Source of the DNA: Thalia democratica
Taxonomy: Eukaryota
Length of the DNA: 64,000 nucleotides
Assembly: GCA_965202585.1 (NCBI GenBank)
Contig: OZ241826.1
Location: 248,001 to 312,000, forward strand
Direction of reading: 5' to 3'
In this document: positions 6,512 to 64,000 of the stretch, piece after piece
Numbering within the stretch: the stretch's first letter is position 1
How the letters are laid out: each line of letters begins with the position of its first letter
Translations under genes and position numbers: made by a program
The notes under the pieces: model-generated
Databases searched by the model: none
What the model was told of the DNA's origin: nothing
The model's input: only the letters and a program-made list of their open reading frames with translations

Positions 6512-6898
6512 TTAAATATTAGAAACTTCAAAGGCGAAATATAAATAACGAAGCAAAAATTACCTATTACTGAGGCGGGGGTTTTGAAAATAAAAATAAA
6601 AAAACTTTTTTTTTTTAAATTAAGGCCTTAATGCTCGTAAAAGGCTTTTTATGTTTGCATTTTGGCCCCTTGTATGTTCGTGTGCGTGGTTAAAAAAACA
6701 AAAAGTCCATTTTGGCGTTTTGGTCGCATTTTTGAGACAAAAAAAAAGAATAAATGACAAAAACTTGCAAAAGTAAGAAAAAACAAAAGATTCGTAATAT
6801 TAAGAGGCAAATAAAGAGAGAGGCGCGAAATATGAAAGCTGTCCATTTGCTATATTTTCCTTATGACGTCATCCATTTAATTTTTGTGCATTATGACG

Positions 6899-7051
6899 TC
6901 ACTTTCCGCAGTTGGCTTCGGGCAGGGCCGCGGAGAGTTCTTCCAGCTGCGCCCACGACTCGATCTCAAAAACGTCCCTGGGGTCCTCGACCATGTCTCT
7001 CAGCGAGTCCTGGCACCGCGGGTCGAACGAGGGCAGCCCGACCACGTACAA
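6899..7051 (-). CDS. Exon 48: vWA C-terminus and stop
   Basis: [50 protein letters not shown]; no transmembrane segment or obvious GPI signal; the stop TGA lies inside TGACGTCA. Confidence 0.9.
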   Translation of the reverse strand: MYVVGLPSFDPRCQDSLRDMVEDPRDVFEIESWAQLEELSAALPEANCGK

Positions 7052-10000
7052 CTGTTGAGTGTTTAAATATTTGTTAAATAGAAGAAAAAAAATCATTTGG
7101 TTAGCTTTATTTACACGATTTTTCTTTAGATTTAAAGTTTTCAAATTGAAAAATAACTGTTGAGGAAAAATTTTTTCAAGGGGTTCTTAAAACTTATCTA
7201 GAGAAATTACACTTAACAACTTTTTCTGTGTTCTATTAATTTTATGTTATGATAATATTTACTAAATAAATTTTACTGAAGTTCAACTTTATACAGTAAA
7301 GTGCTTAAACGAGCTAGACAAAAAGCTTAAACAAATCTAGTATAATTTACTTTTAATTTTTGTAATCGCGTTAGTAAAGCAGTTAAACGAACAAATTTTT
7401 CGCACAGTGTTTCTATAGTTTTTCTTTTCAATATTTTACTACTTTAATGTTTTTGAAATACAAATTCGAACCTTGATGCCCCTCCTTCTGATTCTCTTGA
7501 GTCCTTGTTGGAGGTAGTATCCCTTATCTGTCCTGCATCCATCTGTGGCCAGGATGATGTCGTGATCGATGTTGTCATCCCTGCCTGGGAAACTTCTCAT
7601 ACCTGATTTAAATAGTTGTTTGTTGAACGACGCTCAAAATATTAGGACCTGGTGCACGAAAAAACCTTTCAGTTATCGAGTCGCACACCACGGACACCTT
7701 TTAATGTCTTGTCCAGGACTTTTGTGTTGATTAATACATGTTATCAATAACCAATTAATAACCATAAAAAAAAAACTCAATACAAATTGTTAATAGCTAA
7801 AAAGTAACCTCAGTTTTTAATGTTATAATCAATGAATTCACTTATCTCAAATAAAGCTAGACAAACTAACTTAATAATTATTGCCAAGTTTATGCAATGA
7901 TTAAAAAAAAAAATCAATACTTTTATTTAGTAAGTTCACAGTAGTTTGTATGTTTAAGTGTTATTTAAGTATGCCTTCTCTGTTTTGATATTTCAACTAA
8001 ACACTTTGTGAAAGTGTAAAGCTTGTAGGTAGTGCAAGAATGGGAAGCTTTGTAAACAAGTGGACTAGCAGTTCACATTAGTTTAAATCGTGTTGTTTAG
8101 TTAATAATATCACTAAAAACATCTATTGTTATTAAAACTTGTAACTAGAATGGTTCATAAAAAAATCGGATTATTTAATTAAATCCCTGATTTGAACTTT
8201 TATAAAGGTCAACTTTAAACGTTTTTTAATTAAATTTAAAATTTATTCAGTTTTATCTTTTTGGTTTTCTGCGTAAATCTGATGTTTTTTTTTTAATCCT
8301 GTTAGACAAAATCTCAACTTCTTAAGCTAGCTGATAGTAATTACATAATTTATTAAAGCGGTTTACAGATAATATTAATAATTAAATTAATGTTCAAATA
8401 GATTATTGATGCTGCTTTAAACTAACTTTCCTAAGTTAGGCTGATAAAAATTTAACTGTTTAGCTACGTCAAGCAAAAGTTGAAAAGTTTTAAACTTTAG
8501 CTGAATTAGTTTTAATTAAATAAATTTTACAGTCCTTAAGTAGGTTTAAAATCCAATAACACTTGAAAAAAATCTAATTTTTACAAAATTCAGTTTTTTT
8601 TAAATATCTTAATTAATTACGATCTTATTAACATTTAATTTTTATATCAAAGGTTGATATCATAACAGATGATTTAAAAATATTTCAATCCCGTCAGGTT
8701 TTAATGCTAATGGTGGGAAAATCTGACCAAAACTCTTTCATTTAATTAAGTAAAAATTTAAACACGAACTTTTAATAGCTTGATGACTAATTGATTAACA
8801 AACTTCAATTAAAATTTCATCAAAATATTTTGACTTAATTATCTGATGAGCTTAAAGTATGTTAAAATTTCATGTTTTATTTGTTTGAAAACTTTTAAAG
8901 TTTCAAACATTAAAATAACTTTCGCTTTTAAATTTATTTACTCATATACAAATATAAGTGAGTATAGTATAAAAGTTGCTTAATAATTATACTTCATAAA
9001 CATTTCCTTCATGTTTATTATTTTTAAGTATATTTTAATACATATATGAATTATAAGTTTGTAAAAGTTGAAGTTAAAGCTTGAAAAGATTGTTTTTATA
9101 TGCAAGGCTGCTACAATTAGTCGTGGCATTAAAAAATTGTTGTCGAAAAAAAAAACGAAAAATATTTTTAATTGATTTTTTTCCGGTCTATGAAAATATT
9201 CACTGAGTTATGTCATTACTGAATATCGGAAAAAGTTTTGTAAACATTTCAAGATTTTGAACACAAATAAAATATTTAAATAAAAATATAAAGTGCCTTG
9301 TTTATAAGACAAACAAAATTTTACGTATATGAAGAAATTTAGAACAAGTAAAATATAAACTGCTCTTGGTAAAGTTAATTTTTATTTGTGGTTAGTAAAC
9401 AGTTTTTTTGAGATATTTTTCAGGGAAAATTCGTTCTGCAACAAATAAACTCAAAAGACAGTGAAAATTTTTGATAAAATTTGTTTTTAATTAATACTAG
9501 CTGTTGTGTACAGCTGTCATAACAATGTTTTTATTGAGGTGATTTTATTAAAAGTATTTAAAGTTTGGTTGTTTTGAAAACACAACTTTATAATGTGAAG
9601 CAGTATTATAAGGAATTTGATAAAAATTAGTTTCTGACATTTATAATTTACCATAAAACAAAAAATTAAAAACCTTATTTGTTTACTAATGCCGACACAA
9701 TGGTTTTATTTTTCTGGCGTAATTAACTTTTTTGGTTGTTTTGTAAATAGTGGTAGAACCTTAAAAACAAAGATTAGGAATAAAACAAAGACTTTGCAGG
9801 TAAATGTTTTACAAAAACAGATTAAAATTTAAATAGTTTGGTTTAGTTATTAATACTTATTACAAACAGCTGTCAATATTGTGTTTATGTTTTGAGCTTA
9901 GTTTGTATTCATAATTCTGTTTGCCTATAAAAGAAATATTTTAAAACACCTAAAAGTTATTGAAGTTTTCTTCCTAATTTTTAACACACCTTAGAAACAA

Positions 10001-13000
10001 AATTTTTAATATTTACCAGATTATTTTGAGTGTACTGTTGTATATATACTGTTCTAATTTTTATTAGTGTGACACAATAACACAAAACTATTTATAATAC
10101 TATTAAACAATAGATTAAGTTTTGACAAAACTTGTCTAATTATAATAAGTTATTGTTTATACGTGTCAATTTAACTATTTTATTTTAAGATATTTTAGGT
10201 GTTATATGGTTATACACTGAAATTACTTAAAATATGGAAAAGGCATAGTCAGTTATAAATAGCAAAAATTTATCGTCAGAAATACTAACTAAATATGCAT
10301 TATTTTCTTTAGTTTTGTAAGTTATAGAAGAAAAAAAGTTGTTGGAAAAGAACAAACTAATGTTTGAAATAAACACTCTATAGTTAAGATTAATAAACAA
10401 AGATAATTTTCAAAGAAAAGCTTAAGGTTCTGTTCAGTATATAAACCACTTTTTTATAGAGGATTTAAAAGTAGATTAAGCATTTGTAAAAGTAAACTAA
10501 ATCTTAAGATTGGTGGAAATTGTTTACCTTCTTGGAGTAACATTTTAAATTTCTATTTATTTATATAATTAACCTGGTAACAAAAATTAACTCTAAAGTT
10601 CTTAATTTTAAGTTAAAAACCCTAAATAACAACCAATCAAACCTTCGGATTGTTGGAAAGTCCACTGGGACGCGTCCCTCAGAGCGGATCCGATCTTGGA
10701 CCTGTACCCGCCGTGGAACCGCGACCTGTCCATGGCTTTCAGCAGGGACGGCAGGTCCTGGTACGAGTCGAATCCGAACTGCTGGCGCGTGAACCTGGCG
10801 AATGACATCATGGCGAATTGCGCCCCCTGTGGACCGACCCCGTGGGGCACTGACGACGCTACCGCCTGTTGAGAAAATTTATATTTCAAGAAACAATTGT
10901 AAATTTTATTTATTGGGGATGCTATTAAAATTTTAATTAAATTACAATTATAACAATAACGCTTTTTTATTTTTACCTTTTTCATCAAAACTACATAATT
11001 GCTGCTAACAGAGTTTTAAGTTGATATTTATTGTAGACAACAGCTAGCAGCTACAATGAAAAACTTTAATTTTTTCTAGAGACTTTTTGAATTTAAATCT
11101 ATAAAACTGTTTACAACTTTTAGCGTCTAACTTACCTTGAAAAGACCCTTGATTTTATCATAATTGACCCAACCAATAGATCCGGACTCATCACCAACAA
11201 CAAGAATATCTCGCTTTCTTGATCCTAAAACAAATAAACAATACCGTCAGTTGTGCAAACAAAAGCTTTATTTATTCGATCTTAGAATCTTTTGAAGTTG
11301 TATAAACTACTTATAAATGTTCTACGAAGATAAACAAAAGAAAGTTTTAAAATTTTAGTTTCAAGTTTTAATAATCCAAATGGTAGAAATTGTTAAAAAC
11401 TAAGTGTAACATTGCTTTGTTATCTTTTAAATTAAAAAGCCATCATAAGCAAGTGTTCAGGACAAACTGTAATAACAATTTATATTTTTAGTTTAATTTT
11501 TTAATAAAAACCTCTGTTGACGAAATTGGCTTTGAATCTGCATATAAAATTGTCTGAAGGTAGCTCATCTACTTCGCATTCTGTAAAATGAAAATTTATA
11601 TCAAACTAACATATTTAAGTATATTATGTGTTTTGGTTTTAAGAAAACAAATAGAGAGATCTCAACTGCTGGAGGAGAAGTAATATATTTATTCTTTCAA
11701 AAATTTATTTTACAAACTAAGTTTTGGTCAATAATCAAAAATTTATTGTACAAACTAAGTTTCGGTCAAAGACTTTGACCGAAATTTAGTTTGTAAAATT
11801 AATTTTTGAAAGAATAAATATATTTAAGTATATTATAACTTTTGTGATAAGTTTAGTAAAGGTTTCTGAACTTATTGCAAGTTTGTAAGTTACATTAAAA
11901 TCACTACAAAAAAATATTTTTCTATTTAATCATCTGGTAAGCAATTTTAGTTTAACACCAATACAATCTTATACATATTTCGTTAGAAGCTATTACTTCT
12001 GGAAAAACTTTACCAATAATAATATAAATAATATAATACATTATAAATTATATAAAACAAATAAGTAACCTTCTTCATTAGAAGCAAGTACTTCTGGGCA
12101 AGCTTTTCCAATAATAATATAAATAATATAAAACATTATAAATAATATAAAACAAGTAAGTAACCTTCTTCATTAGAAGCTAATACTTGTGGACAAGCTT
12201 TTCCAGTACCTACAGCTGCTGATACGACAATTTCAATCTGTGTCTTCAGTCCATCGACGCATTCACTCCATGGTGATAGCTCCGTTACACAGTCAGCACA
12301 CGCTGTAAGAATAAAGAGGATAACATATAGTTCAGTTAACATTTGAAAAACAAACTTACACTTATTGAAAAAAAAAACGTTTATTAATGATATTTACAGT
12401 TGTTAAGCTTTTATATGTATGCTTTATAATTTTGTTGAACTAAATACAAGTATAAATGGAAAACGGTTTTTTTATCAATGCTAACAGTTTAGTAAAAGAA
12501 GTACTCTTATAATTATTTAAGAGTTTGTAAATTTTGCAAAACTAGCAACAGAAGAAACTTTACCTAACTTGCTATTATACTTTGTTAGCTACAAGCTTTA
12601 AGCAAAATAAAACAAACTCTAGGTGTCAGACTTGAGTCTTGGAGTTAGACTTACATATCTATTAAGAATATACTTTTTGTTTTTAATATAACCTCAATGG
12701 AAACATGGTGTGTTACTTTTTTTTTGGTAGTTTTACTCCTTAGTTTTCCACGAGTTTTTTTAAAAAGGTAGTATTTATAAATATATAAAGTTACACAAAC
12801 ATTGAGTGTCGGTTTTGAGCGCAGGGCATGCTTTTCCAACACCTTTGGGGGTGACCACCACAATTTGGCTCTTTGACATTTTTCCGTTGACACATGATGA
12901 ATATTCTTCCTCCCATTGGACAACGCAGTTCACACAATCTGGTTGGTTAATATTAATATTTTAGTAAAATTATGTCGTAATTAAACAATACAGAATATTA

Positions 13001-55000: not shown

Positions 55001-58000
55001 CCTTTGTTGCCAGCAATTGGTTTATCCTAACTGCTTAACACTTTAACATGTTCACATTGTAAATAACATATACATGTAGCAACATATGATTTTACCATTG
55101 CTGTCTGGGTAGTCCTCATAATCCTCATAGTCATCAGGGTAATCCTCGTACTCTTCGGAGTAGCCGTTATCGTACTTGTTGTAGTCGTACCCTCCATTGG
55201 ACGCACCGTCGTTGTAACCCCCTCCGTATCCCCCCGCGTAATCGTAGTCCCCTCCGTCGTAACTATAATCGTAATTCCCGTCGTATCCGTCTGTGTATAT
55301 GCGAGTTTTTATTTGTAGTTTGTCTTCTGTTGAAAAAAAATTAACGTACACAAAAAATGCGTGCAACTGACAACAGAGACTTGTATTTGATTGGTTAATA
55401 AATTATGTACTTGTATTTGATTGGTTAATAAATTATGTGCTTGTACCGAGCGGGGTAATTTAGTCGAATTAAATTCTTGTGATGTGGAGAGTTTTGAAAG
55501 TAGTATTTGTTGTATGATAGCTGTATTAGGCGTCGTAATTCATAACAAAACTGCTTCTTTTATGTTTTTACTTTTTGTAAGCAAAAGAACTGTTACAATC
55601 CAAAGTTGACTTATACAATTGTTTCAAATAAAAAAGTAGTATTAATAGTTTACTTATTTTAGTTTATTAGAACTAATACTTCTTAAACTTCTCAAAAAGG
55701 GTTTAAAGAGTTCAGACAAATTGTTCAGTTGGTAAGTAAACTGGATAAGTCGTACTTACTATATGTATTTCTATTTTTGATTCAAACCGTATAAAATAAT
55801 TTAAAGTTGTGTTGAACTCGTAAAAGTTCATTGGTGCAAACTTGCAATGTACAACTAAAACAAGGCATTGTGTTCAAAAATGCAGAAAACAGTGTTTTAA
55901 AGTTATATTTGTTTAAAAGTTTATGAAAATAATGTGCGTGCAAAGTAAACACTTGAAAGATAAAATAACTGCACAAAAGTTTCTCAGAATTTTCAGAAGA
56001 TTTGCATTAAAATTTGTTGACACATCAAACTTGTGTTGAGACTTTAAAGTAATAAAAATCTTGTGCCCCTCATAAGTTAAGCTGGTTGAAGTTGTGAAAA
56101 AGAACTTTGATAAAAAAAATATTTTATAATGACAGACTATTTTTTTATTAATATTTAAGAAGACGCATCAGTTTTACTAAAAAATAAAGTTTAGTAAAAA
56201 TTACTGGAACCCAAGTCTTACAGCGTTATTTTATCTTAAGTTAGAACTCAAACCAGAGTTTTATAAAACAAAAGTTTTCAAAACCTCACACAAAGCCAGA
56301 AGTCAAACCAAAATGGTAAAAAAGTCAATTCCTGCCTATTGTTTGTGATTTCAAACAAGACGCCGGCTTGGTCAAGTAAACAGAAAATAATTTTAAGAAT
56401 CCAAACAAAGAAATTCTTCATTGTGTTGAGCAAGCGGAGCGGAAAAGAATCTTTCATCTTTTGTGGAGAGTTTCGGAGAGATTTGTCGAAAATCCAACGA
56501 ACAAATCTTTTCTTTTGTCACACCGTCTCCCACCTACTACAACTCCACGCTTGACTGATTCACGTTGTGGCTGTGAGTGACGTCACAAAGAAGCCATCTA
56601 CCGGCTTCTGTTGGCTTTTGAAGTGTCTTGGTTTTATTGTTAACTCCACATCTCCTATCCCCCCATAACCTCATATTGTCTTCCCCACATTCCTGTACTT
56701 ACTTCTGTCACCCCATGCCTTCTCCTTTTGCGTGGCTTTTAAGCCGGTTTGTTTTTGAGATTTTACTGGTTGAAGTGCAAACATTTCGCTCTTTTCATGC
56801 TTGCAAGAAACTTTTTGCAGCTTTTAAAAAAACTTTGTTTTTTTAAAGAAACTTTTCGCAGCTTGCAAACTAGCTGTAAAAGTCTTTTATTTTTGCAATT
56901 TATTATTCATTTAAATGTTTTATTACCTTTTTCAATGGAAAAACTAGACTCTTTTCAAATTATGTTAAAAAATAATCAGTTTAGATTTAATCTCTTTAAT
57001 TGTGGCTACAAACGACCAACTTCAATGTTTGTTGATGATGTTTGAAAAATTTTTTGAAAAATGTTTGAACAAGGACCGTTTGTTCTTAAAACAGAGCTAA
57101 AACTAAACAGGGCTTAAAAAACCAAAAAAGACTAAGAATAAAGAGTAAGATACTTGAATGTAAATTAAATTAATGATTGTTTTTTAAAATATTTATTTTT
57201 TACTTTTTATTAAAAGATAAACATGAATATTTTTTAGATGTACAAGTAGCTACGGTAAAAGTTCCATAAAAAGTATATTTATTTTCAAATCAAAACGATT
57301 TGTCAACGGAAAATAAAAAGATAGAGAAAAATGTAGAAAAACTTCTGACTGGATGTACTTTCATTGCAATTTAAGCCTTGAAACCAGCGATGTGTGACGA
57401 AACAGGGCACAAAGTTCATTAAAGTGATCGGTAGAGCTAGTTAATACTTTTGTTAAGTAAACAAAATACTTCGATTAATCTTAAATGTCTAGACCTGGTT
57501 GATTGATCATTTTGTATTAAACCTTTCTATGGGATAGTTTTGTGTGTTTTCAAATTTTATGGTTATAAAATTTAAATGGCATTAATTTTTTACGATTTTG
57601 AAAAGTTAGTTATGTTTCAAAGTTTGTATTAGTAGATAGAATCAATACTGTTAAAGCTTTACTTTGAAAATATAGGTTTTAGTTTTACAATTAAATATTA
57701 AACATTTTTTTATAGGTGTTTTATTATCATTAGGTTATGGACTTGAGTATTAAGTTAAACACTTCAAATAATCATTTCAATATTTTCAAAATTCTATTAA
57801 TTTTAATAGACAAAACACAAAACTGAATTTTTTAAGTAAAGTTTTTAAGTAATTTTCATAATTACCTTATTCAGCTGTTAAGCTTATAAAAAACTAAGAT
57901 AAAACAGATAGGAAACTTAAAGTTTTTAGTTTAGAAACTACAAAAAATCTAGAAAAAAACTAACTTGCAGTAATTTACAACTTAAAGTTTATATTTGTCA

Positions 58001-59039
58001 AATTATATATGTTAACTTTAAGTTTAAGTTCATATTTATATTTAATTTTATTCATTAAAATAAGTGTATACACCAATACAAGCGAGACAAGTAAATTAAA
58101 AGCCGTCTAATGACCTCAAAAATGGGGGTATTATTTCATGTTTATCTTGTAATTGTTAATTTATTATTTTCAAAAACTTTTTCATCGTGTCTAGACGTCT
58201 TAAAATGCATTATAACATAAACAGCCGTAAAGTTAATGAAATTTTGAGGCGTAAAGTAAATTAAATTACACTTTAACAAAGCATTAGCACTTTTTAGTTA
58301 ACAGAAAATATTTCATATAATTTTAATCAAGCCCTAAATACCGTTACGAATATTACTGAAATTTTTTCTAGTGTTTACAAAATGAAAAGTATTTGATCTT
58401 TGTGTACACTTAAATGCAATTATTAAAATTTAACATATGCTTTTAAATATTAATTAATTAAGTATAAGACTCAGGTGCAATTTTTTTCTAATTAATTTTT
58501 GATGTATGAAGAAAAGACATTGTTAATAAAAAAAACTGTCTTTATACGATTACAATATAGTTAAAACACTGACTGTAATGTTAAAAAAGAGAAATACTAC
58601 TTAAAGTCATTTTTTTATAAATTTTTTTTGGTATTTGTTAACAAAATTAATCGTGTAGCCTACATTAGTAATTGCCTAGTTGACCAAATATACTTCTTTA
58701 GTAAATTAACATTTTTGATTGTGCTTTTTTTTGAATATCTTTATGTAGAATATAATAAGTTAGACACAATCAATTAAATTTATCATAAATAACATATATT
58801 GAAAGAAACAGATTATTTATTTATCAAATTGGTGTTTAAGATGTTTAATAATAATAAACATTAAAATGATATATAAATTTTACAACTCTTAAATTCGTTC
58901 AACGTAAATTTTGTTGAAACGAGTAAGACAATTATTTATAAGTAATAAAATTAATTCAAAAAAAAAAAAAAACAAACAAACCGTCTTGGCAAGTCGCAAT
59001 GCCGACAAGCAACAGGACAAGCAAGCATCTCAGCACCAT
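6899..59039 (-). CDS. Complete 48-exon gene for a ~2308-aa secreted modular ECM/adhesion protein: SP - Tyr/Asp/Gly-rich - SG site - SEAx2 - CCPx2 - TSR-like x34 - vWA
   Basis: complement(join(6899..7051,7472..7602,10643..10865,11136..11224,11512..11580,12165..12302,12801..12938,13239..13373,13751..13888,14271..14408,16995..17132,17354..17491,17645..17782,18135..18269,18421..18561,18783..18929,19838..19975,20242..20391,20696..20833,21040..21174,22358..22492,22648..22782,22981..23256,25493..25627,25706..25840,26303..26437,27433..27567,27904..28038,31460..31594,31864..32136,32571..32708,34504..34638,34923..35060,35462..35530,35725..35797,36157..36437,37678..37815,42859..43059,46960..47160,48787..48879,49504..49663,50536..50681,50968..51193,52902..52999,53885..53903,54700..54878,55096..55290,58982..59039))). 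Every intron is GT-AG, phases are compatible, the total of 6927 nt is divisible by 3, and there are no internal stops. Extra exons hidden in long introns cannot be excluded. Confidence 0.88.
7472..7602 (-). CDS. Exon 47: vWA domain (TDG motif)
   Basis: [44 protein letters not shown] matches G.RP..PKV.I.LTDG.....A..LR..GI; AATCAG / GTTCGA. Confidence 0.88.
10643..10865 (-). CDS. Exon 46: vWA domain middle
   Basis: [74 protein letters not shown] follows the vWA pattern GP..T.V.VVQF...F.L..Y....L..AI..I.Y.GG.T.TG.AL. Confidence 0.9.
11136..11224 (-). CDS. Exon 45: vWA domain start with MIDAS DxSxS
   Basis: [30 protein letters not shown]; TTTTAG / GTAAGT. Confidence 0.9.
11512..11580 (-). CDS. 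Exon 44: final TSR Cys plus linker
   Basis: [23 protein letters not shown]; TTTACAG / GTTTTT; 69 nt, phase 1-1. Confidence 0.75.
11682..11824. mobile_element. Palindromic MITE/foldback-like element in intron 43
   Basis: ~49-bp arms AATATATTTATTCTTTCAAAAATTTATTTTACAAACTAAGTTTTGGTCA and its reverse complement (about 3 mismatches); central hairpin TTCGGTCAAAG-A-CTTTGACCGAA; a related fragment occurs at ~49730-49760. Confidence 0.55.
11981..12204. repeat. ~95-bp tandem triplication of the exon 43 3' end and donor
   Basis: GTAACCTTCTTCATTAGAAGC at 12065 and 12160, with a third decayed copy at ~11981; AT-rich spacers are shared. Confidence 0.85.
12165..12302 (-). CDS. Exon 43: TSR-like module 34
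   Basis: [45 protein letters not shown]; phase 1-1. Confidence 0.88.
12801..12938 (-). CDS. Exon 42: TSR-like module 33
   Basis: [45 protein letters not shown]; phase 1-1. Confidence 0.88.
13239..13373 (-). CDS. Exon 41: TSR-like module 32
   Basis: [44 protein letters not shown]; phase 1-1. Confidence 0.9.
13751..13888 (-). CDS. Exon 40: TSR-like module 31
   Basis: [45 protein letters not shown]; phase 1-1. Confidence 0.9.
14271..14408 (-). CDS. Exon 39: TSR-like module 30
   Basis: [45 protein letters not shown]; phase 1-1. Confidence 0.9.
16872..17022. repeat. Partial duplication of the exon 38 3' end and donor
   Basis: ACAAACCTTCCTGTTTGACATCAAG (~16880) versus ACAAACCTTCCTGCTTGACATCAAG (16989). 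Confidence 0.8.
16995..17132 (-). CDS. Exon 38: TSR-like module 29
   Basis: [45 protein letters not shown]; phase 1-1. Confidence 0.9.
17354..17491 (-). CDS. Exon 37: TSR-like module 28
   Basis: [45 protein letters not shown]; phase 1-1. Confidence 0.9.
17645..17782 (-). CDS. Exon 36: TSR-like module 27
   Basis: [45 protein letters not shown]; weak donor GTCTAA. Confidence 0.88.
18135..18269 (-). CDS. Exon 35: TSR-like module 26
   Basis: [44 protein letters not shown]; phase 1-1. Confidence 0.9.
18421..18561 (-). CDS. Exon 34: TSR-like module 25
   Basis: [46 protein letters not shown]; phase 1-1. Confidence 0.88.
18783..18929 (-). CDS. Exon 33: TSR-like module 24
   Basis: [48 protein letters not shown]; its acceptor is the last unit of a minisatellite; donor GTAAGT. 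Confidence 0.87.
18920..19672. repeat. Minisatellite of ~17 units (42-52 bp), each carrying the exon 33 splice acceptor
   Basis: Unit GGTGTGCACTCTGTTTGAGTAAAATA..., which on the sense strand reads TTTTACTCAAACAG|AGTGCACACC; 44-bp subarray near the exon, mostly 48-bp units distally. Confidence 0.95.
19838..19975 (-). CDS. Exon 32: TSR-like module 23
   Basis: [45 protein letters not shown]; phase 1-1. Confidence 0.9.
20242..20391 (-). CDS. Exon 31: TSR-like module 22
   Basis: [49 protein letters not shown]; phase 1-1. Confidence 0.9.
20696..20833 (-). CDS. Exon 30: TSR-like module 21
   Basis: [45 protein letters not shown]; phase 1-1. Confidence 0.9.
21040..21174 (-). CDS. Exon 29: TSR-like module 20
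   Basis: [44 protein letters not shown]; phase 1-1. Confidence 0.9.
22358..22492 (-). CDS. Exon 28: TSR-like module 19
   Basis: [44 protein letters not shown]; phase 1-1. Confidence 0.9.
22648..22782 (-). CDS. Exon 27: TSR-like module 18
   Basis: [44 protein letters not shown]; phase 1-1. Confidence 0.9.
22981..23256 (-). CDS. Exon 26: TSR-like modules 16-17 (double exon)
   Basis: [91 protein letters not shown]; 276 nt, phase 1-1. Confidence 0.9.
25493..25627 (-). CDS. Exon 25: TSR-like module 15
   Basis: [44 protein letters not shown]; phase 1-1. Confidence 0.9.
25706..25840 (-). CDS. Exon 24: TSR-like module 14
   Basis: [44 protein letters not shown]; phase 1-1. Confidence 0.9.
25889..25914. 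repeat. Partial duplicate of the exon 24 acceptor and first codons
   Basis: ATCCTACTTCGCAATCAACGCAATCT versus exon ATCCTACTTCGCAATCGATGCAATCT. Confidence 0.8.
26303..26437 (-). CDS. Exon 23: TSR-like module 13
   Basis: [44 protein letters not shown]; phase 1-1. Confidence 0.9.
27433..27567 (-). CDS. Exon 22: TSR-like module 12
   Basis: [44 protein letters not shown]; phase 1-1. Confidence 0.9.
27904..28038 (-). CDS. Exon 21: TSR-like module 11
   Basis: [44 protein letters not shown]; phase 1-1. Confidence 0.9.
28095..28140. repeat. Partial duplicate of the exon 21 acceptor and first ~12 codons (93-bp offset)
   Basis: TTCCATTCTTCCCAATCAACCTTGCAGTCAATATATACTGTGAATA versus 28002-28047, 3 mismatches; the copy reads [12 protein letters not shown]. 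Confidence 0.85.
31460..31594 (-). CDS. Exon 20: TSR-like module 10
   Basis: [44 protein letters not shown]; phase 1-1. Confidence 0.9.
31864..32136 (-). CDS. Exon 19: TSR-like modules 8-9 (double exon)
   Basis: [90 protein letters not shown]; 273 nt, phase 1-1. Confidence 0.9.
32571..32708 (-). CDS. Exon 18: TSR-like module 7
   Basis: [45 protein letters not shown]; phase 1-1. Confidence 0.9.
34504..34638 (-). CDS. Exon 17: TSR-like module 6
   Basis: [44 protein letters not shown]; phase 1-1. Confidence 0.9.
34923..35060 (-). CDS. Exon 16: TSR-like module 5
   Basis: [45 protein letters not shown]; phase 1-1. Confidence 0.9.
35462..35530 (-). CDS. Exon 15: TSR-like module 4, C-half
   Basis: [23 protein letters not shown]; TTTTCAG / GTAAGA. 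Confidence 0.8.
35725..35797 (-). CDS. Exon 14: TSR-like module 4, N-half
   Basis: [24 protein letters not shown]; TTCACAG / GTAAGT; phase 0 to phase 1. Confidence 0.8.
36157..36437 (-). CDS. Exon 13: TSR-like modules 2-3 (double exon)
   Basis: [93 protein letters not shown]; phase 1 to phase 0. Confidence 0.88.
37678..37815 (-). CDS. Exon 12: TSR-like module 1
   Basis: [46 protein letters not shown]; canonical PVDC start; GTCACAG / GTTTGT. Confidence 0.9.
42859..43059 (-). CDS. Exon 11: CCP/sushi module 2
   Basis: [66 protein letters not shown]; phase 1-1, 201 nt. Confidence 0.92.
46960..47160 (-). CDS. Exon 10: CCP/sushi module 1 (six-Cys type)
   Basis: [56 protein letters not shown] matches C..P.NG...C...G..C...C..GY.L.G....C...G.WS..P.C; phase 1-1, 201 nt. 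Confidence 0.92.
48171..48300. promoter_or_regulatory. Promoter/enhancer-like motif cluster in intron 9
   Basis: AAAATGGC (YY1-like) 48171; CCAATCA 48210 and CCAAT 48220; TTTTCCCGCCA (E2F-like) 48229; CCACGTGG (E-box) 48285. Confidence 0.35.
48787..48879 (-). CDS. Exon 9: acidic/Pro linker
   Basis: [31 protein letters not shown]; TTTCAG / GTTAGT; phase 1-1. Confidence 0.75.
49504..49663 (-). CDS. Exon 8: SEA-like domain 2, C-half
   Basis: [53 protein letters not shown]; ACACAG / GTGAGT. Confidence 0.75.
50306..50531. repeat. 15-bp minisatellite (consensus GAAGTGCGTACTTGA), about 15 copies, abutting the exon 7 donor
   Basis: Directly visible tandem variants; explains ORFs 50195-50461 and 50268-50534. 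Confidence 0.9.
50536..50681 (-). CDS. Exon 7: SEA-like domain 2, N-half
   Basis: [49 protein letters not shown]; ATAG / GTTAGT. Confidence 0.75.
50895..50986. repeat. 46-bp tandem duplication spanning the exon 6 donor
   Basis: TACAATACGTGTATATTGAAGTTCAACCTTCAACAAAAGT(C/G)ACGAC twice. Confidence 0.9.
50968..51193 (-). CDS. Exon 6: SEA-like domain 1, C-half
   Basis: [75 protein letters not shown]; FEPG resembles SEA FRPG; GC-rich codons; CCAACAG / GTTGAA. Confidence 0.78.
52902..52999 (-). CDS. Exon 5: SEA-like domain 1, N-half
   Basis: [33 protein letters not shown] resembles the SEA pattern F-x-I...F...L/Y-x-D-x-x-S-x-x-Y/F-x-x-L; GTTCAG / GTTAGT. Confidence 0.72.
53885..53903 (-). CDS. 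Exon 4: 19-nt micro-exon (DDNTPE)
   Basis: TTTTACAG|GACGACAATACTCCAGAGG|GTGAGT; needed to bridge phase-0 exon 3 to phase-1 exon 5. Confidence 0.8.
54511..54694. promoter_or_regulatory. Cluster of four TGACGTCA (CRE-type) motifs within a ~70-bp direct repeat, intron 3
   Basis: Exact motifs at 54512, 54569, 54582 and 54687, plus TTACGTCA at ~54653; the segment TAAAA..CACTAGGATAATATTGATATCACAATA occurs twice. Confidence 0.5.
54700..54878 (-). CDS. Exon 3: Tyr/acidic region ending in DGSGSG
   Basis: [60 protein letters not shown]; acceptor CACCAG, phase-0 donor GTTAGT. Confidence 0.85.
55096..55290 (-). CDS. Exon 2: Tyr/Asp/Gly-rich low-complexity region
   Basis: [65 protein letters not shown]; acceptor ACACAG (an in-frame alternative TTCAACAG would start the exon at 55326); donor GTAAAA. 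Confidence 0.8.
55379..55445. repeat. 30-bp tandem duplication in intron 1
   Basis: ACTTGTATTTGATTGGTTAATAAATTATGT twice plus a partial copy. Confidence 0.85.
58982..59039 (-). CDS. Exon 1: start codon and signal peptide
   Basis: ACA-ATG-G Kozak context; [17 protein letters not shown]|QD has a basic residue, a hydrophobic core and small residues at -3/-1; phase-1 donor GTTTGT. Confidence 0.85.
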
Positions 59040-62039
59040 TGTGACGAAATTGTAATATGACGTCACAAAAACCAAGAGTTCCAATAAAAAGCTGCAAAAC
59101 TTACGAGCTAAAAAGTTAAAAAATTTTAATTAAAAATTTATATTCGTTAAATATTATTGTAAATTTTTTAAGGGAAAGCTTTTAGGTATTAATTACAAAA
59201 ATAATTCTTTATAAAGTTGTTTAGCTTTTGCTTTTGTAATTTATTATGCAAACTTACTATTTTAAACATTATTCAGTATACTAATCTAATACTAACAGTT
59301 TAAAACACTTAAAAAAATTGACTTTGATTAGTTTATTCGATAACCTATTACAGTACACTATATACTAATGTAAATAAAGTTGAATTTAAAAATTTTATTT
59401 AGGATAGTTTGTATACAAAAATAGTAAGTTAATTACGGAAACTAAATTTGGATTATTTGAAGTCAAAAAAAAAAACAGCTTTTTTTTTTTTCTAAAAAGT
59501 AATTGGTTCTTAACTACTATCTATAAATACCATTGATTAGATTAGAGAAATTATATACTTCAGTTGGTCAATGATTCATCTATTATAAAGAAAATCTTTA
59601 ACAAAGGTAATTTAAAACGTTTTTAGTAATGTTTATCTTCAAATTATCAGTATAAAATGCATGACTGATCAGCTAATCTTTAAATTAATTGGGCAATAAA
59701 TTAACTTTTCAACGATTAACTAATTGCTTCATCGAAATATAAACATAAATTATAAGTAGAATTATTTCTTAACTGCAGATCAAAAAAAAATAAGATAAAG
59801 ATATATTTTGCTGATAAATAGATTATATCTATAGTCTGTTACCTAAAGTGTTGAAACACAACTACAAAAAATACTGCCATTAATGTGTTTAAGTATGTAT
59901 AAGTTTTTCCTTTTTTTTCCATAAAAACTTGAAAACACTGAAAAAGTATGATTAGTTGCTAATTGCTTTTCAAGAAACAAAAGAGCAGTTGAAATTAAAA
60001 ACAAAAGAAACCAACATACTGACAAAGTGCACCGCGTATCAGGAAATCAAAATAAAAGTGTAAAACCACAAATTAAATACAACAAAACGCCTGTTAATTA
60101 CGTTGGGTTGGGATTAAAAGATGAAATATAATCTTTGCCTCAATTAAAATAATTCCCCACCACATTATTTGATCAGGTGGACCACATAAATTAAATTATT
60201 TTTTATCAAACCACAAACATTAAATTATTTTATCGTCTATTAACAATAGGCGCAGTCGATAATTGAGTAAACATTCGAGCTAGTGAACGAAGTTTTTATG
60301 TGTTTAAACAGTTTTCAAGCTAAAAACTCAAGTTTTGAAGTATGAAATTTTTGTTGGCCAGTTAAACTTGTTGCTTATAATTAAAATTATCTTTAAAAAG
60401 TTTTTTGCACAAAAGTGTTTAATACAACAGTTGTGTTTTTGTTTTGATTTTTTTGTACTGTCATAATTACAGTCATGTACTATTTTATAAAAACACCGGG
60501 TATATTTTTTCTGTTTAAATAACCTTATTTCACTGTAAAAAGTTTTTTATAAACGAAATATTCAACCGTCTGTCCATCAAACAAATAAACAATGTTGATG
60601 TTTCCTGTTTATAATAAACACACCCTCACAAGCAACATAACTCGGAACACACCTAACTAAAACTAAAAATTTTCAAAGTAAAATGCAGCTGTCTACAAAA
60701 AATTTTTAATACTTGTTAACAACAGCAACTGTTCTGAGAAAGTTTAAGTTGTTGATGGAAAGTTCATAGATAAAATGATTAAAAAAATCTTTCGTTGCCT
60801 TTAATTGAAGATATTGTTTGTTATCAAATTTGTGATAAAAACTAATTTTAAGCAAACAATCTTATTGTAAATTCACTTACAACAAATTGTAGAGAATTTA
60901 AAATGCTTTAAAATAGTTGTAAAGTTATTCGTTGATTTATATGAAAATTGTGCATTACAATTTGTACTAAAATTAAATTAAAACACATATGATAGGTTAG
61001 TATTAATAATCTTGAGTTAAAAGTTTGTTTTAAAATTATACTTAAAAATAATTTAAGCTTATTATTTCTTTTTTAATTTTTCTAAACTCTTTATTTTTAA
61101 TGAACAACAAAAAGATTAAAAAAAAAATATAAAAATTATGTTCTATAAAACAGGATGTAAAAAAAAAACTATGTTTGGAGATTTATCTTAGTGTAATTTC
61201 TATAAGAAAAAAAAAAGGATGGTGTTATTAACACAAAACATAACTAGTTATTTTCTCATATAAACAATAAATAACACACTGAAGAAACTTATACACATAT
61301 TGTGTTTAATGATAGTTTAAGCTTTGAGAAAAATTGATAAAAAAGGAGACTGAAAAATAAACTTTGTACAAAGTTTACAAACAAAAAATATCTTCTTTTG
61401 ATATAAATGAAAACCTTCTTGTACCCGTTGAAAGATATAGCACTTTCAACAGTATAATAAAAGCACAAACAAAGTTTAAATGAAAAGCTATAGTTAGTCC
61501 TAAGTGTTCTTTAAAACACTATTAACAAAACGAATAATCAAAACTTATCGAAACTAAACAATTACTATTGACTTCTATCAGCAGTTTTCTAATCGGTGTT
61601 TTAAAATAATTTTTTTTTACAGAATTTTCTTTTAAACATTATGATAGTAAAACATTAAGAAAAACAAACATTTACTGTTATGGGCTAATATAAAAAAAGT
61701 TTCCCATTCTTTTGTATTACATAGTAAAAAGGTATCAATGATAAATGTATTTTCAAAACATAACAATACCTATCTACCGAGAGCGAAAATAATGTAAAAT
61801 AATTCAACAGTATTACAACAAACTTAAACTTTAAAGACGAAAAACCTTTCGGTTCACTAATGCTTTGTGCATAAAGCAAAAAGAAAAAAAAAAAACTTTA
61901 AATTCAATCCAAAACTGACTCGCAAAACAGTATGCATAAAGAAGTAAAACAAAAAAGTACTTTAAAAACGTCTTGAAAAAATACGCTGAATTTTTTTTTG
62001 TAAATCACAACTGAACTATAAGTAAACAAAAAACTTAGA

Positions 62040-62640
62040 ACCACTCGCAAACTTTTAATTTTCAGCAGTCCACTTAGCAAGTTGCAATCAATCAGCCCCC
62101 CAACAACCACGCCCAACGAGTTGCTTCAGAGACACCATGTCTGCAGCACTTGCAATCACGAGTTTTAAACTTTTGACCCTGAGAGCAAATATCACATAGT
62201 CGCGACTTCACAAGCTGCGACATTGAAGCGAATAAGTTGCACAAGTTTCAACTGAAAACTTGTATGTCCGCTTTGCTACGAAAAAAATCTGCCTTTTTCT
62301 CATGAAAAATATTCGGAAAAACACAAAAAAAGTTGACGAAAAATAACGCTTTCAAGTTGGCTAAACTGGAAAAAAAGTTTCACTGGTTCGTGCAACTTTT
62401 CGAGTTTGAAAATTTTGATGGAAATAATGCAAATAAATGTTTCCGTCTCTCCGTCCTGAGTTGCGTTGGAACAAAATCGAGTGCCGACAAACAAATTAGC
62501 TTTTCTCGGTCGAAGAGCAGCGCAAGTAGAGAAACGAGAAAAAAGCGGTTCACAAGGAAACACGAAGGGAAGAGAAACGAAAAAGGACCTGAGTTGTGAT
62601 TTGTAAATAGGAAACCGGAGATTGTTGCGTCATAATGGTA
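62040..62640. promoter_or_regulatory. Candidate promoter / 5' regulatory island upstream of the gene
   Basis: Locally GC- and CpG-enriched non-coding block ~3 kb upstream of the ATG, with CCACGCCC (GC-box-like), TTGCAATCA and TTGCGTCAT motifs. Confidence 0.3.
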
Positions 62641-64000
62641 GTTTGCAAGTATTAAATAAAAAAATTGTTGATTGCTTATTTTATATTAGAACATAGTAAT
62701 TATACTAAACGAGTAATTGTGCTCAAAATACAAAGATACTAGAAAGCGTATACTTTTGTTAGCTACAATATTGTTTGGAAATTTTGATTGCAAATCTAAT
62801 GTCAATATTTTTACTTGTTTAAGATCGCTGCTTCTCGATTAGAAACGTTTTAACTTGAAAAAAGAAACTTTTGTTTACAAACACTTAACGGAAAACCAAC
62901 TAGATTTCAAACAATCGCTAGTTAGTCGTACAAAAAGCACACATGCAAGGCTAATTGAAATAAACTTCAGAAATTAAACAAAACCTTGAATTTTCTTTAT
63001 AATTTAAAAATTGACCTTATAAAACATCGGAAACACAGCAAATGTAATCCTAAAACAAACTTTACACGAAATATAAATCAAAAATAAACAGCCTGATAAC
63101 AACGACATCAAACACGTCTAGTTATACAAAGTTGTAACTTGATTAAAATATATCTGAGGCTTTAAAAACAACTTTTGCAACTTTAAACCTTAAAACTTTT
63201 TTGTAAAGAAATATTCTTTTAAAGATTTATAACAAAACTAAAGATTTAGTTTAAAAATAAAAAAATATAAAAAAATATAAAGTTTTTTTTTAATAAAACG
63301 TAACATTTGTAACTAAGCTCAAGTAGTTAACAAACAAGTTAATGCAAACTGCAGCTAAGAAGGCAACATTTACTAGCCCCGAGGTAAACTGTAAAAAGAC
63401 AAATAAAATGTTACGCGCATTAGTGATAAGTTAAAACATCAGGGAAAAAGAACCATCGAAGTGTAAATACTAATAAGTTGGTATAAACGTTAAAAATTAG
63501 CTTTTAAAAGATTTAAAAAATATTATTAAGGTTGTCAGTTGCAACCTAGGGTTAAATATTTGAATAAAATGCAAGTTATAACTACTCAAAAGAACTATTT
63601 ATCAGAATTAGTACAATAAAAATATTATCAAACTTGTTGATATACTGTATATGGAAAAAAATTAAAAAACATTTGTGCTTTTTAAATTTTTTTTTGCTTG
63701 AAGAAACCAACTTGTAATTTAAAGTTTTAAATTCTTTTTAAAGCTTTTAAGTTGACAATTAAAAAAAAAAAAACGAATTCTTGGACCTTTTATCCTGAAA
63801 AAGTGGGTACAACAAACAATGACTCACTATGACGTAACAAAAGAGTTGCGTGACGTCACAAAAGAATTTGAAACTCTTCAATTCTTTTGTGCTAAATCTT
63901 GCCTCGAAAACAAATAAAATGACACCCCAAGTTTGATTGAAAAACCGTTTTAAAAAGATTTATAAAAAAAACTTATTTGTTGTTTATATTGCAAAACATT

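What the first reader, a model, noticed from the sequence alone, without database searches (positions are those of the whole stretch)
6864..63858. TGACGTCA palindrome strongly enriched and sitting beside splice sites of GC-rich exons
Seen: 19 exact copies by eye (260, 6864, 6894, 15754, 22635, 22966, 34490, 36444, 36469, 46944, 48747, 51020, 54512, 54569, 54582, 54687, 56578, 59058, 63851), against about 0.3 expected at 25% GC. Twelve lie in or within ~35 nt of a coding exon, six of them 5-8 nt from a splice site (exons 3, 10, 13, 17, 26, 27). One overlaps the stop codon and one is 18 nt upstream of the ATG. Variants (TTACGTCA, TGATGTCA) flank exons 12, 18 and 25. The AT-rich exons 5, 14, 15, 43, 44 and 45 have none. 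Known: this is the CREB/ATF site, binding is CpG-methylation-sensitive, and a palindrome reads the same in DNA and pre-mRNA. Inference: an exon-marking code rather than promoter CREs - either bZIP-set local hypomethylation or nucleosome boundaries that preserve GC/CpG-rich exons, or an RNA-level splicing element.
Basis: partly seen in the sequence, partly recalled or inferred. Interest (0 to 1): 0.7.

Follow-up and report, generated by a model that had tools for sequence, protein, structure and literature searches.

The report
CRE palindrome hugging exon edges
In this very AT-rich tunicate (salp) gene the eight-letter palindrome TGACGTCA occurs about 60 times more often than chance and sits preferentially a few letters inside introns next to exons; it looks like a docking site for a paired DNA-binding protein used in an unexplained, exon-linked way.

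Summary
All 19 exact TGACGTCA copies are at the stated coordinates, against 0.28 expected, and it is the most over-represented 8-mer in the window.

I built my own 46-exon model, without RNA support. The gene lies on the minus strand and encodes a secreted protein with Sushi, TSP1 and VWA domains. Against that model:
- Six of the 12 intronic copies lie within 10 nt of a splice junction (P about 3e-6): five start at donor +6 to +9 and one ends 6 nt before an acceptor.
- One copy supplies the stop codon and one lies 18 nt before the ATG.

New points:
- **Longer word.** The real word is a 12-bp palindrome, T-R-TGACGTCA-Y-A, with the same flank preference on both sides.
- **Selective variants.** Only the TGACGTAA hybrid is clearly enriched among variants.
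- **Clustering.** Sites come in pairs 13-57 nt apart.
- **Mismatched pairs.** Variant pairs are not compensated for base pairing.
- **Not an artefact.** The copies are not a dispersed repeat and are not explained by GC.

Together this favours a two-fold symmetric reader on double-stranded DNA, of the ATF/CREB bZIP type, over an RNA element.

It is not a general exon code. Only 11 of 46 exons have a copy within 40 nt, and GC drops abruptly at junctions whether or not a motif is there. The function is unknown.

This scan has noted the same word before on other pieces of this genome. I found no paper describing it.

The parts
6899..59039 (-). Coding span of the host gene. It has 46 modelled exons: signal peptide, acidic Tyr-rich region, 2 Sushi domains, about 36 TSP1 exons of 135-138 nt, and a C-terminal VWA domain.
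   Evidence: My own exon chaining; Pfam TSP1 and VWA and Sushi; ATG and stop read directly. No RNA evidence was available.
59058..59065 (.). Exact site 18 nt upstream of the ATG (59039-59037), in the 5'UTR or core promoter. A CGTCA half-site lies directly before the ATG.
56578..56585 (.). Exact site inside the putative exon 2, in frame T-GAC-GTC-A (Asp-Val). This exon call is uncertain.
54687..54694 (.). Exact site starting at intron +6 after the donor of exon 54700-54878. The hybrid TGACGTAA (54653) follows 26 nt further on.
54512..54589 (.). Three exact sites (54512, 54569, 54582) inside a 71-nt tandem repeat, 111-181 nt into the same intron. They are copies multiplied by duplication of the donor-proximal stretch.
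51020..51027 (.). Exact site inside exon 50968-51193, in frame A-TG-ACG-TCA (Met-Thr-Ser). It is the only one of three synonymous opportunities in the gene that is used exactly.
48747..48774 (.). Pair after the donor of exon 48787-48865: the variant TGACGTCG starts at +13 (48767) and the exact site at +33 (48747).
46944..46951 (.). Exact site starting at intron +9 after the donor of the Sushi exon 46960-47160. An ACGTCA half-site follows 3 nt later.
36444..36502 (.). Triple before the acceptor of exon 36157-36437: an exact site ending 6 nt before the junction (36444), an exact site ending 31 nt before it (36469), and the variant TGACATCA ending 57 nt before it (36495).
37819..37826 (.). Hybrid site, TTACGTCA in the sense orientation, ending 3 nt before the acceptor of exon 37678-37815.
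34451..34497 (.). Pair after the donor of exon 34504-34638: the exact site starts at +7 (34490) and the hybrid TGACGTAA at +46 (34451).
32714..32721 (.). Variant TGACATCA (sense orientation) ending 5 nt before the acceptor of exon 32571-32708.
25452..25480 (.). Variant pair after the donor of exon 25493-25627: TGACGACA starts at +13 and the hybrid TGACGTAA at +34.
22966..22973 (.). Exact site starting at intron +8 after the donor of exon 22981-23256.
22635..22642 (.). Exact site starting at intron +6 after the donor of exon 22648-22782.
15754..15761 (.). Exact site deep in a 2.6-kb intron, inside a small island of 43% GC. No open reading frame or exon relic is recognisable there.
6864..6901 (.). 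Pair at the 3' end of the CDS. The first three letters of 6894-6901 are the stop codon TGA (6901-6899). The second exact site (6864-6871) lies 22 nt further on, in the 3'UTR.
205..267 (.). Cluster 6.6 kb beyond the 3' end of the gene: the exact site at 260 and CGACGTCA at 205, with an ACGTCG nearby.
63830..63858 (.). Cluster 4.8 kb upstream of the ATG: the exact site at 63851 and a hybrid at 63830, 21 nt apart. An AP-1-type TGAGTCA word follows directly.

Best explanation
TGACGTCA is the core of a 12-bp palindrome, T-R-TGACGTCA-Y-A. I think selection keeps it as a double-stranded-DNA binding site for a two-fold symmetric dimer, most plausibly an ATF/CREB-class bZIP factor.

In this gene the sites are intragenic. 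They come singly or as homotypic pairs and are pushed as close as possible to the edges of coding segments: directly after the 5' splice-site consensus, directly before the acceptor, at the stop codon and just before the ATG. The TSP1 coding sequence offers almost no synonymous room for the word, which would explain why it sits beside the exons and not inside them.

The most likely function is a DNA-level, co-transcriptional mark for a subset of exons: a bound factor that pauses RNA polymerase II or fixes chromatin at the exon edge. That would be analogous to what is reported for CTCF at mammalian exons (from my own knowledge, not checked here).

Shown: the enrichment, the 12-bp symmetry, the variant grammar, the clustering and the exon-edge bias. 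Inferred: the protein reader and the effect on exon recognition.
For: - **Enrichment.** 19 copies against 0.28 expected, and at least 20-fold in every class of sequence.
- **Sharpness.** The 19 exact copies compare with 24 copies for all single-mismatch variants together, against about 12 expected.
- **Symmetric flanks.** T at -2 in 31 of 38 half-flanks (16/19 on one side, 15/19 on the other). R at -1 in 36 of 38.
- **Selective variants.** The TGAC/TTAC hybrid occurs 11 times against 2.1 expected. The transition variant TAACGTCA/TGACGTTA occurs 0 times against 2.1.
- **Specificity.** TTACGTAA, TGACTCA and other palindromes of the same composition are not enriched.
- **Clustering.** 12 gaps of 60 nt or less against 1.6 expected.
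- **Exon-edge bias.** 6 of 12 intronic copies lie within 10 nt of a junction, P = 3e-6; the result survives collapsing duplicated copies.
- **Recurrent donor-side layout.** At four donors and at the stop codon, a first site at +2 to +13 is followed by a second 12-31 nt further on.
- **Mirror orientation.** All six hybrid sites within 60 nt of an exon have the TTAC half pointing away from the exon: four on the donor side, two on the acceptor side. This is mirror symmetry about the exon (two-sided P = 0.03).
- **Little coding room.** Only 3 synonymous opportunities in 2147 codons.
- **bZIP-like intergenic cluster.** The cluster at 63830-63858 sits beside an AP-1 word.
Against: - No binding, chromatin, methylation or RNA data exist for this locus.
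- Only 11 of 46 exons are marked, and marked donors are neither weaker nor followed by clearly longer introns.
- Donors outnumber acceptors 5 to 1 for exact sites. A purely DNA-level exon mark would more likely be symmetric.
- There is some sense-strand asymmetry. G..T flanks outnumber A..C flanks 9 to 2, the -1 flank gives Fisher P = 0.04, and intronic TGACGTA outnumbers TACGTCA 11 to 2. That could point to an RNA-level reading or to overlap with the donor consensus.
- The gene model is ab initio.
- Conservation in relatives could not be read from the laid contigs.
Confidence: 0.4

Rival explanations
1. The sites are ordinary transcriptional CRE clusters. They would be intragenic enhancers or internal promoters bound by ATF/CREB or AP-1 factors that control expression of this secreted-protein gene. 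Under this reading the exon-edge position is incidental, for example because elements persist better next to other constrained sequence.
For: - The same DNA-level evidence as the best explanation applies: the 12-bp symmetry, the hybrid half-site grammar and the homotypic clusters.
- Clusters outside the CDS at 205-267 and 63830-63858 look like classical bZIP modules; the latter has an AP-1 word beside it.
- The site at 59058 is near the likely transcription start.
- Earlier scan notes describe the word in promoter-like cassettes elsewhere in this genome (unchecked).
Against: - Enhancer logic does not predict 6 of 12 intronic copies within 10 nt of a junction, against a composition-weighted chance of 4% per copy.
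- It does not predict a copy exactly at the stop codon.
- It does not predict the exon-centred orientation of the hybrids.
Confidence: 0.2
2. The word is an RNA-level element. UGACGUCA in the pre-mRNA would be an intronic or exonic splicing enhancer or regulator. It would be bound by an RNA-binding protein next to the 5' and 3' splice sites, or would act by pairing between copies.
For: - The position directly after the donor consensus (+6 to +9) and just before acceptors is typical of splice-site-proximal enhancers.
- There is modest sense-strand asymmetry of flanks and half-sites.
- Because many copies are intronic, the signal cannot act in the mature mRNA. Both the pre-mRNA and the DNA readings remain compatible with that.
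Against: - A single-strand reader gives no reason for the flanks to be reverse complements of each other, yet both sides independently show T-R.
- If copies paired with each other, 4 of the 5 variant pairs would carry an uncompensated mismatch. Those four are 54687/54653, 34490/34451, 25473/25452 and 36469/36495. Only 48767/48747 gives a G-U wobble (sequences).
- Hybrid orientation flips between the donor and acceptor sides.
- The word is equally enriched outside the gene.
- 35 of 46 exons splice without it.
Confidence: 0.2
3. The sites are recombination hotspots of the M26/CRE type, as in fission and budding yeast. An ATF/CREB-bound ATGACGTCAT would focus meiotic breaks near exons and drive gene conversion among the tandem TSP1 exons, or GC-biased conversion.
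For: - ATGACGTCAT is the M26/CRE hotspot word and is active through ATF/CREB bZIPs in two distant yeasts (PMC3534124).
- Two donor-proximal sites (22635, 22966) and a variant pair (25452/25473) lie in the 21.0-25.6 kb block. Another note on this window reports exon homogenisation in that block (unchecked).
Against: - GC does not decline gradually from the sites. It drops within 10 nt of every junction, and unmarked exons are equally GC-rich, so there is no conversion-tract footprint.
- Hotspot motifs are expected to erode, not to be kept sharply exact.
- No recombination data exist.
Confidence: 0.05
4. The excess is an artefact or a by-product. The copies would belong to a dispersed repeat or MITE, or would follow from locally higher GC near exons.
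For: - Four copies (54512, 54569, 54582 and partly 54687) are multiplied by one 71-nt tandem repeat.
- 22635 and 22966 follow paralogous exons.
Against: - Outside that tandem repeat, similarity between site flanks is limited to 10-20 nt around the word itself.
- The local-composition null gives 0.35 expected in total and 0.009 in the junction-proximal class.
- Significance survives collapsing duplicated copies.
Confidence: 0.02

Closest known systems
cAMP response element (CRE), the ATF/CREB bZIP site TGACGTCA
   Same: It has the identical 8-bp palindromic core. The R/Y flanks are as in ATF-type sites. Tolerance of a TGAC/TTAC hybrid half-site fits bZIP half-site logic. Sites occur in homotypic clusters, one of them beside an AP-1 word.
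   Different: Classical CREs sit within a few hundred bp of transcription starts and are rare. Here 17 of 19 copies lie within a 52-kb stretch from just before the ATG to just past the stop codon. Half of the intronic copies abut splice junctions, and the density is about 60 times chance.
CTCF-type DNA roadblock that promotes exon inclusion (DNA-bound factor downstream of an exon, methylation-sensitive; from my own knowledge, not checked here)
   Same: It is a CpG-containing DNA site placed just downstream of exons. That is the arrangement needed for polymerase pausing to aid exon recognition.
   Different: The motif and the presumed protein family differ. There is no evidence here for pausing, binding or methylation. 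Sites also occur before acceptors, at the start and stop codons, and between genes.
Splice-site-proximal intronic splicing enhancers (for example U-rich TIA-1 sites or UGCAUG RBFOX sites downstream of donors)
   Same: The position is the same, within about 10-40 nt downstream of the 5' splice site, and elements are often repeated.
   Different: Those elements are strand-specific and not palindromic. This word has two-fold symmetric flanks, and the orientation of its hybrid form flips from one side of the exon to the other.
M26/CRE meiotic recombination hotspot of yeasts (ATGACGTCAT; PMC3534124)
   Same: It is the same 10-bp word, found in 4 of the 19 copies (the 10-mer GTGACGTCAT or its reverse complement accounts for 11 more). 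It functions inside coding regions through an ATF/CREB dimer.
   Different: There is no sign of conversion-tract GC gradients, and hotspot activity is untested.

Membership tests
CRE / ATF-CREB bZIP binding site | 8-bp palindrome TGACGTCA with ATF-type purine/pyrimidine flanks | tested here: met
   There are 19 exact copies. 18 of 19 are R-TGACGTCA-Y, and T at -2 occurs in 31 of 38 half-flanks.
CRE / ATF-CREB bZIP binding site | Half-site modularity: functional variants combine bZIP half-sites such as TGAC and TTAC | tested here: met
   The TGACGTAA/TTACGTCA hybrid occurs 11 times against 2.1 expected. TAAC variants occur 0 times against 2.1. However, the TTAC/TTAC and AP-1 palindromes are not enriched.
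CRE / ATF-CREB bZIP binding site | Bound by a bZIP dimer; binding blocked by CpG methylation | not testable with these tools
   No protein, ChIP, DAP-seq or methylation data are available.
CRE / ATF-CREB bZIP binding site | Promoter-proximal location, within a few hundred bp of a transcription start | tested here: not met
   Only 59058, and possibly the clusters at 205-267 and 63830-63858, could be promoter-proximal. Fourteen copies lie in gene-body exons and introns, and two more at the stop codon and in the 3'UTR. Transcription starts are not mapped.
Intronic/exonic splicing enhancer (RNA element) | Positional enrichment next to splice sites | tested here: met
   6 of 12 intronic copies lie within 10 nt of a junction, P = 3e-6.
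Intronic/exonic splicing enhancer (RNA element) | Strand-specific (sense) sequence preference | tested here: inconclusive
   There is modest asymmetry in which purine occupies -1 (Fisher P = 0.04), and intronic TGACGTA outnumbers TACGTCA 11 to 2. But the T at -2 and purine at -1 preference recurs on both sides, and hybrid orientation flips between the donor and acceptor sides.
Intronic/exonic splicing enhancer (RNA element) | Mutation changes splicing | not testable with these tools
   No RNA runs were found for this locus. A minigene test is needed.
Dispersed repeat / MITE terminus | Copies share sequence beyond the short word | tested here: not met
   All-against-all blastn of 208-nt site windows found only 10-20 nt around the word, apart from one 71-nt tandem repeat and overlapping windows.
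M26/CRE recombination hotspot | Word ATGACGTCAT; raises local meiotic recombination or conversion | tested here: inconclusive
   The word is present: 4 copies of ATGACGTCAT and 11 of GTGACGTCAT or its reverse complement. There is no GC gradient around the sites. Recombination itself is not testable.

The most novel reading that the evidence does not exclude
Salps use a bZIP-read 12-bp DNA palindrome as a genome-wide mark for exon edges. It is written inside exons where the protein allows and otherwise packed against the splice-site consensus. Its asymmetric variants point mirror-symmetrically away from the exon. It couples chromatin or polymerase II behaviour to exon recognition in a genome whose introns have drifted to about 25% GC.
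Probability: 0.2. Interest if true: 0.85.

Novelty: new variant of a known kind. Interest (0 to 1): 0.62.

Why it matters
If a transcription-factor-type DNA site is systematically placed at exon borders and inside exons, that would be a concrete, sequence-defined link between DNA-bound factors and exon definition in an animal. It would also be a second layer of constraint on coding and intronic sequence in an extremely AT-rich, fast-evolving chordate genome.

The idea can be tested directly:
- Orientation metaplots would separate a DNA reader from an RNA reader.
- The 12-mer gives a defined probe for finding the binding protein.

If it turns out to be only dense intragenic enhancer CREs, it still flags an unusual regulatory architecture in thaliaceans. 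The salp genome paper searched, and the literature searches, do not mention it.

Tried and rejected
- **RNA evidence.** No RNA run holds the locus.
- **Conservation from laid contigs.** I laid contigs of four runs on 32400-38399. None of the 40 listed differences touches a site, but 542 rows were hidden, so this says nothing about conservation.
- **Orthologues.** A protein word search with the Sushi exon found nothing. A metagenome scan with the same exon found no relative. I therefore had no orthologous introns to compare.
- **Known RNA families.** Rfam has no match in the window.
- **Literature.** No paper links TGACGTCA to salps or to splice sites. The salp genome paper discusses only G-quadruplex motifs.
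- **Maximal-order Markov ranking of k-mers.** It was uninformative because the sub-words are themselves enriched.
- **Intron-bridging pairing.** No intron carries the word at both ends, so I rejected pairing across introns.
- **TSD or TIR origin.** The sequence between paired copies shows no inverted repeats.
- **Link to donor strength or intron length.** Neither is significant.
- **GC halo around sites.** There is none.
- **The deep intronic site at 15754.** I looked for an exon relic and found none.
- **Joined protein model.** Only single exons were searched, by reference.

Full report
**Observation.** The window is 27.8% GC. Under order-1 to order-3 Markov backgrounds, TGACGTCA and its one-letter extensions are the most over-represented 8-mers. 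The only other top-ranked words belong to a minisatellite at 18.9-19.7 kb. Allowing one mismatch adds only 24 sites against about 12 expected. The exact word is therefore kept sharply.

**Host gene.** The GC-rich islands are exons of one long minus-strand gene. My own exon chaining gives about 46 exons from the ATG at 59039 to the stop at 6901-6899. I started from composition and then retrained on codons and splice sites.
- Pfam confirms TSP1 repeats and VWA and two Sushi domains.
- The first exon encodes a clear signal peptide.
- Most exons are 135-138-nt TSP1 units in the same phase.
- No RNA run holds the locus, so the model has no transcript support. Exon 2 (56538-56697) and some 5' exon boundaries are uncertain.
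- Earlier notes of this scan call the genome a salp. I did not verify that independently. The composition fits published thaliacean genomes of 25-28% GC (PMC13746493).

**Where the sites lie.**
- Five exact copies start at intron positions +6 to +9 after donors: 22635, 54687, 34490, 22966 and 46944.
- One ends 6 nt before an acceptor (36444).
- Two more are at -31 (36469) and +33 (48747).
- Three are multiplied by a 71-nt tandem repeat 111-181 nt into an intron (54512, 54569, 54582).
- One is deep in an intron (15754).
- Two are exonic (51020, 56578).
- One supplies the stop codon (6894), with a second copy 22 nt later in the 3'UTR (6864).
- One is 18 nt before the ATG (59058).
- Two lie well outside the gene (260, 63851).

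Against a null built from base composition in a window of ±50 nt, observed versus expected counts are as follows:

| Class | Observed | Expected |
|---|---|---|
| Intron within 10 nt of a junction | 6 | 0.009 |
| Intron 11-40 nt from a junction | 2 | 0.02 |
| Deep intron | 4 | 0.19 |
| Exon | 2 | 0.074 |
| Outside the CDS | 5 | 0.048 |

The chance that 6 of 12 intronic copies fall in the junction-proximal class is 3e-6. It stays at or below 1e-5 when the tandem copies and the two paralogous donors are collapsed. GC alone therefore does not explain the pattern. Nor does a dispersed repeat. Apart from the tandem repeat, flank similarity between sites is limited to 10-20 nt around the word.

**What the word really is.** When both half-sites of all 19 copies are pooled, position -2 is T in 31 of 38 flanks and position -1 is a purine in 36 of 38. 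Each side shows this on its own: 16/19 and 15/19 for the T. The unit is therefore a 12-bp palindrome, T-R-TGACGTCA-Y-A.
- The variant spectrum is selective. The TGACGTAA/TTACGTCA hybrid occurs 11 times against 2.1 expected, and CpG-transition variants 5 against 1.6. The transition variant TAACGTCA/TGACGTTA occurs 0 times against 2.1.
- TTACGTAA, the AP-1 word and other palindromes of the same composition are not enriched.
- Sites cluster: 12 neighbour gaps of 60 nt or less against 1.6 expected.

A recurrent layout appears at exon edges: a first site at +2 to +13, then a second 12-31 nt further on. It occurs at four donors and at the stop codon. A triple sits before one acceptor.

**DNA or RNA?** Two-fold symmetric flanks, bZIP-like half-site grammar and homotypic clusters point to a dimeric reader of double-stranded DNA.
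- If copies acted by pairing with each other as RNA or as a cruciform, variants should be compensated. Instead, four of five variant pairs would carry a mismatch (sequences).
- All six hybrid sites within 60 nt of an exon have the TTAC half pointing away from the exon: four TGACGTAA after donors and two TTACGTCA before acceptors. That is mirror symmetry about the exon, not a fixed sense orientation. The sample is small (two-sided P = 0.03; orientation by side, Fisher P = 0.067).
- Some evidence points the other way. Sense-strand G..T flanks outnumber A..C flanks 9 to 2, partly because the donor consensus supplies the G. Intronic TGACGTA outnumbers TACGTCA 11 to 2. I therefore do not exclude an RNA-level reading.
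- Because many copies are intronic, the signal cannot be read in the mature mRNA.

**What it is not.** It is not a general exon code.
- Only 11 of 46 exons have a copy within 40 nt. These are slightly GC-richer (0.56 against 0.51, P = 0.009), but several of the GC-richest exons have none.
- GC falls from about 0.5 to about 0.25 within 10 nt of junctions regardless of motifs. This argues against the idea that the sites preserve GC-rich exons, and against a gene-conversion halo.
- CpG observed/expected is similar in exons and introns, 0.82 and 0.75.
- Marked donors are not weaker, and their introns are not significantly longer.
- No intron carries the word at both ends, so intron-bridging pairing is unlikely.

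**Why beside the exons?** The confident coding sequence of 2147 codons offers only three places where the word could be written synonymously. One is used exactly (51020), one carries a CpG-transition variant, and one is unused. The intronic copies start right where the splice consensus ends. The donor consensus GT(T/A)(T/A)GT supplies the T-G-T start of the 12-mer, and the acceptor consensus (Y)A(A)CAG follows its Y-A end. This fits a signal that needs to be in or next to coding segments and is displaced into the intron edge when the protein leaves no room. Earlier notes on other genes of this genome report the word inside exons and at exon borders. Those notes agree with this reading but are unchecked leads.

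**Mechanism.** My best reading, at about 0.4, is an ATF/CREB-type bZIP dimer bound to DNA at the edges of a subset of exons, influencing polymerase or chromatin there. Rivals are:
- ordinary intragenic enhancer or promoter CREs (0.2);
- an RNA-level splicing element (0.2);
- an M26/CRE-like recombination hotspot (0.05; word and yeast precedent in PMC3534124);
- an artefact (0.02).

The remainder of the probability goes to something not yet thought of.

**Comparison and novelty.** The core is the classical CRE, but the promoter-proximal location that defines CRE usage is not met. The junction-hugging distribution and the density have no description that I could find. The same phenomenon has already been noted by this scan on other pieces of this genome. 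What this window adds:
- the clearest intron-edge series;
- the 12-bp symmetry;
- the hybrid-site grammar and its exon-centred orientation;
- the uncompensated pairs;
- the near absence of synonymous room in the TSP1 exons.

**Limits.** There is no transcript evidence, no orthologous introns and no chromatin data. The laid contigs could not be read at single-site resolution.

Noticed in passing
window 6903-59039, donor sites: About half of the donors of this gene read GTTTGT, with T at +3 in 17 of 35 and at +4 in 19 of 35. The usual metazoan form is GTRAGT. Many are followed by GT-rich runs such as GTTTGTTTGTTTT. Acceptors favour A at -4 and -5, giving (T/C)AACAG.
   Followed up: partly
window 16780-17011: The last 25 nt or so of exon 16995-17132, together with its donor, is duplicated downstream in the intron. 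There are pseudo-donors near 16880 and 16812. A TGATGTCA variant is carried along, and a TGACGTAA hybrid starts at +8 of the second pseudo-donor.
   Followed up: partly
window 54498-54662: A 71-nt tandem repeat of 2.3 copies just downstream of the donor of exon 54700-54878 multiplies the palindrome. It appears to derive from the donor-proximal stretch.
   Followed up: partly
window 63810-63860: Two CRE-like words 21 nt apart share the left flank TCTTTTG. An AP-1 word, TGAGTCA, follows directly. This looks like a small bZIP module, 4.8 kb upstream of the ATG of the TSP1 gene.
   Followed up: no
window 21040-25627: Three TSP1 exons (21040-21174, 22358-22492, 25493-25627) encode almost identical peptides. 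Two donor-proximal palindromes and one variant pair lie in this block. A link between the word and gene conversion was not tested.
   Followed up: no
window 55096-55290 and 54700-54878: Two exons encode an acidic, Tyr/Gly/Asp-rich low-complexity stretch with no Pfam match, lying between the signal peptide and the Sushi domains.
   Followed up: no
window 18918-19674: A 48-nt minisatellite of about 16 copies lies directly upstream of exon 18783-18929. It accounts for the other top-ranked 8-mers, such as GTGCACAC.
   Followed up: no
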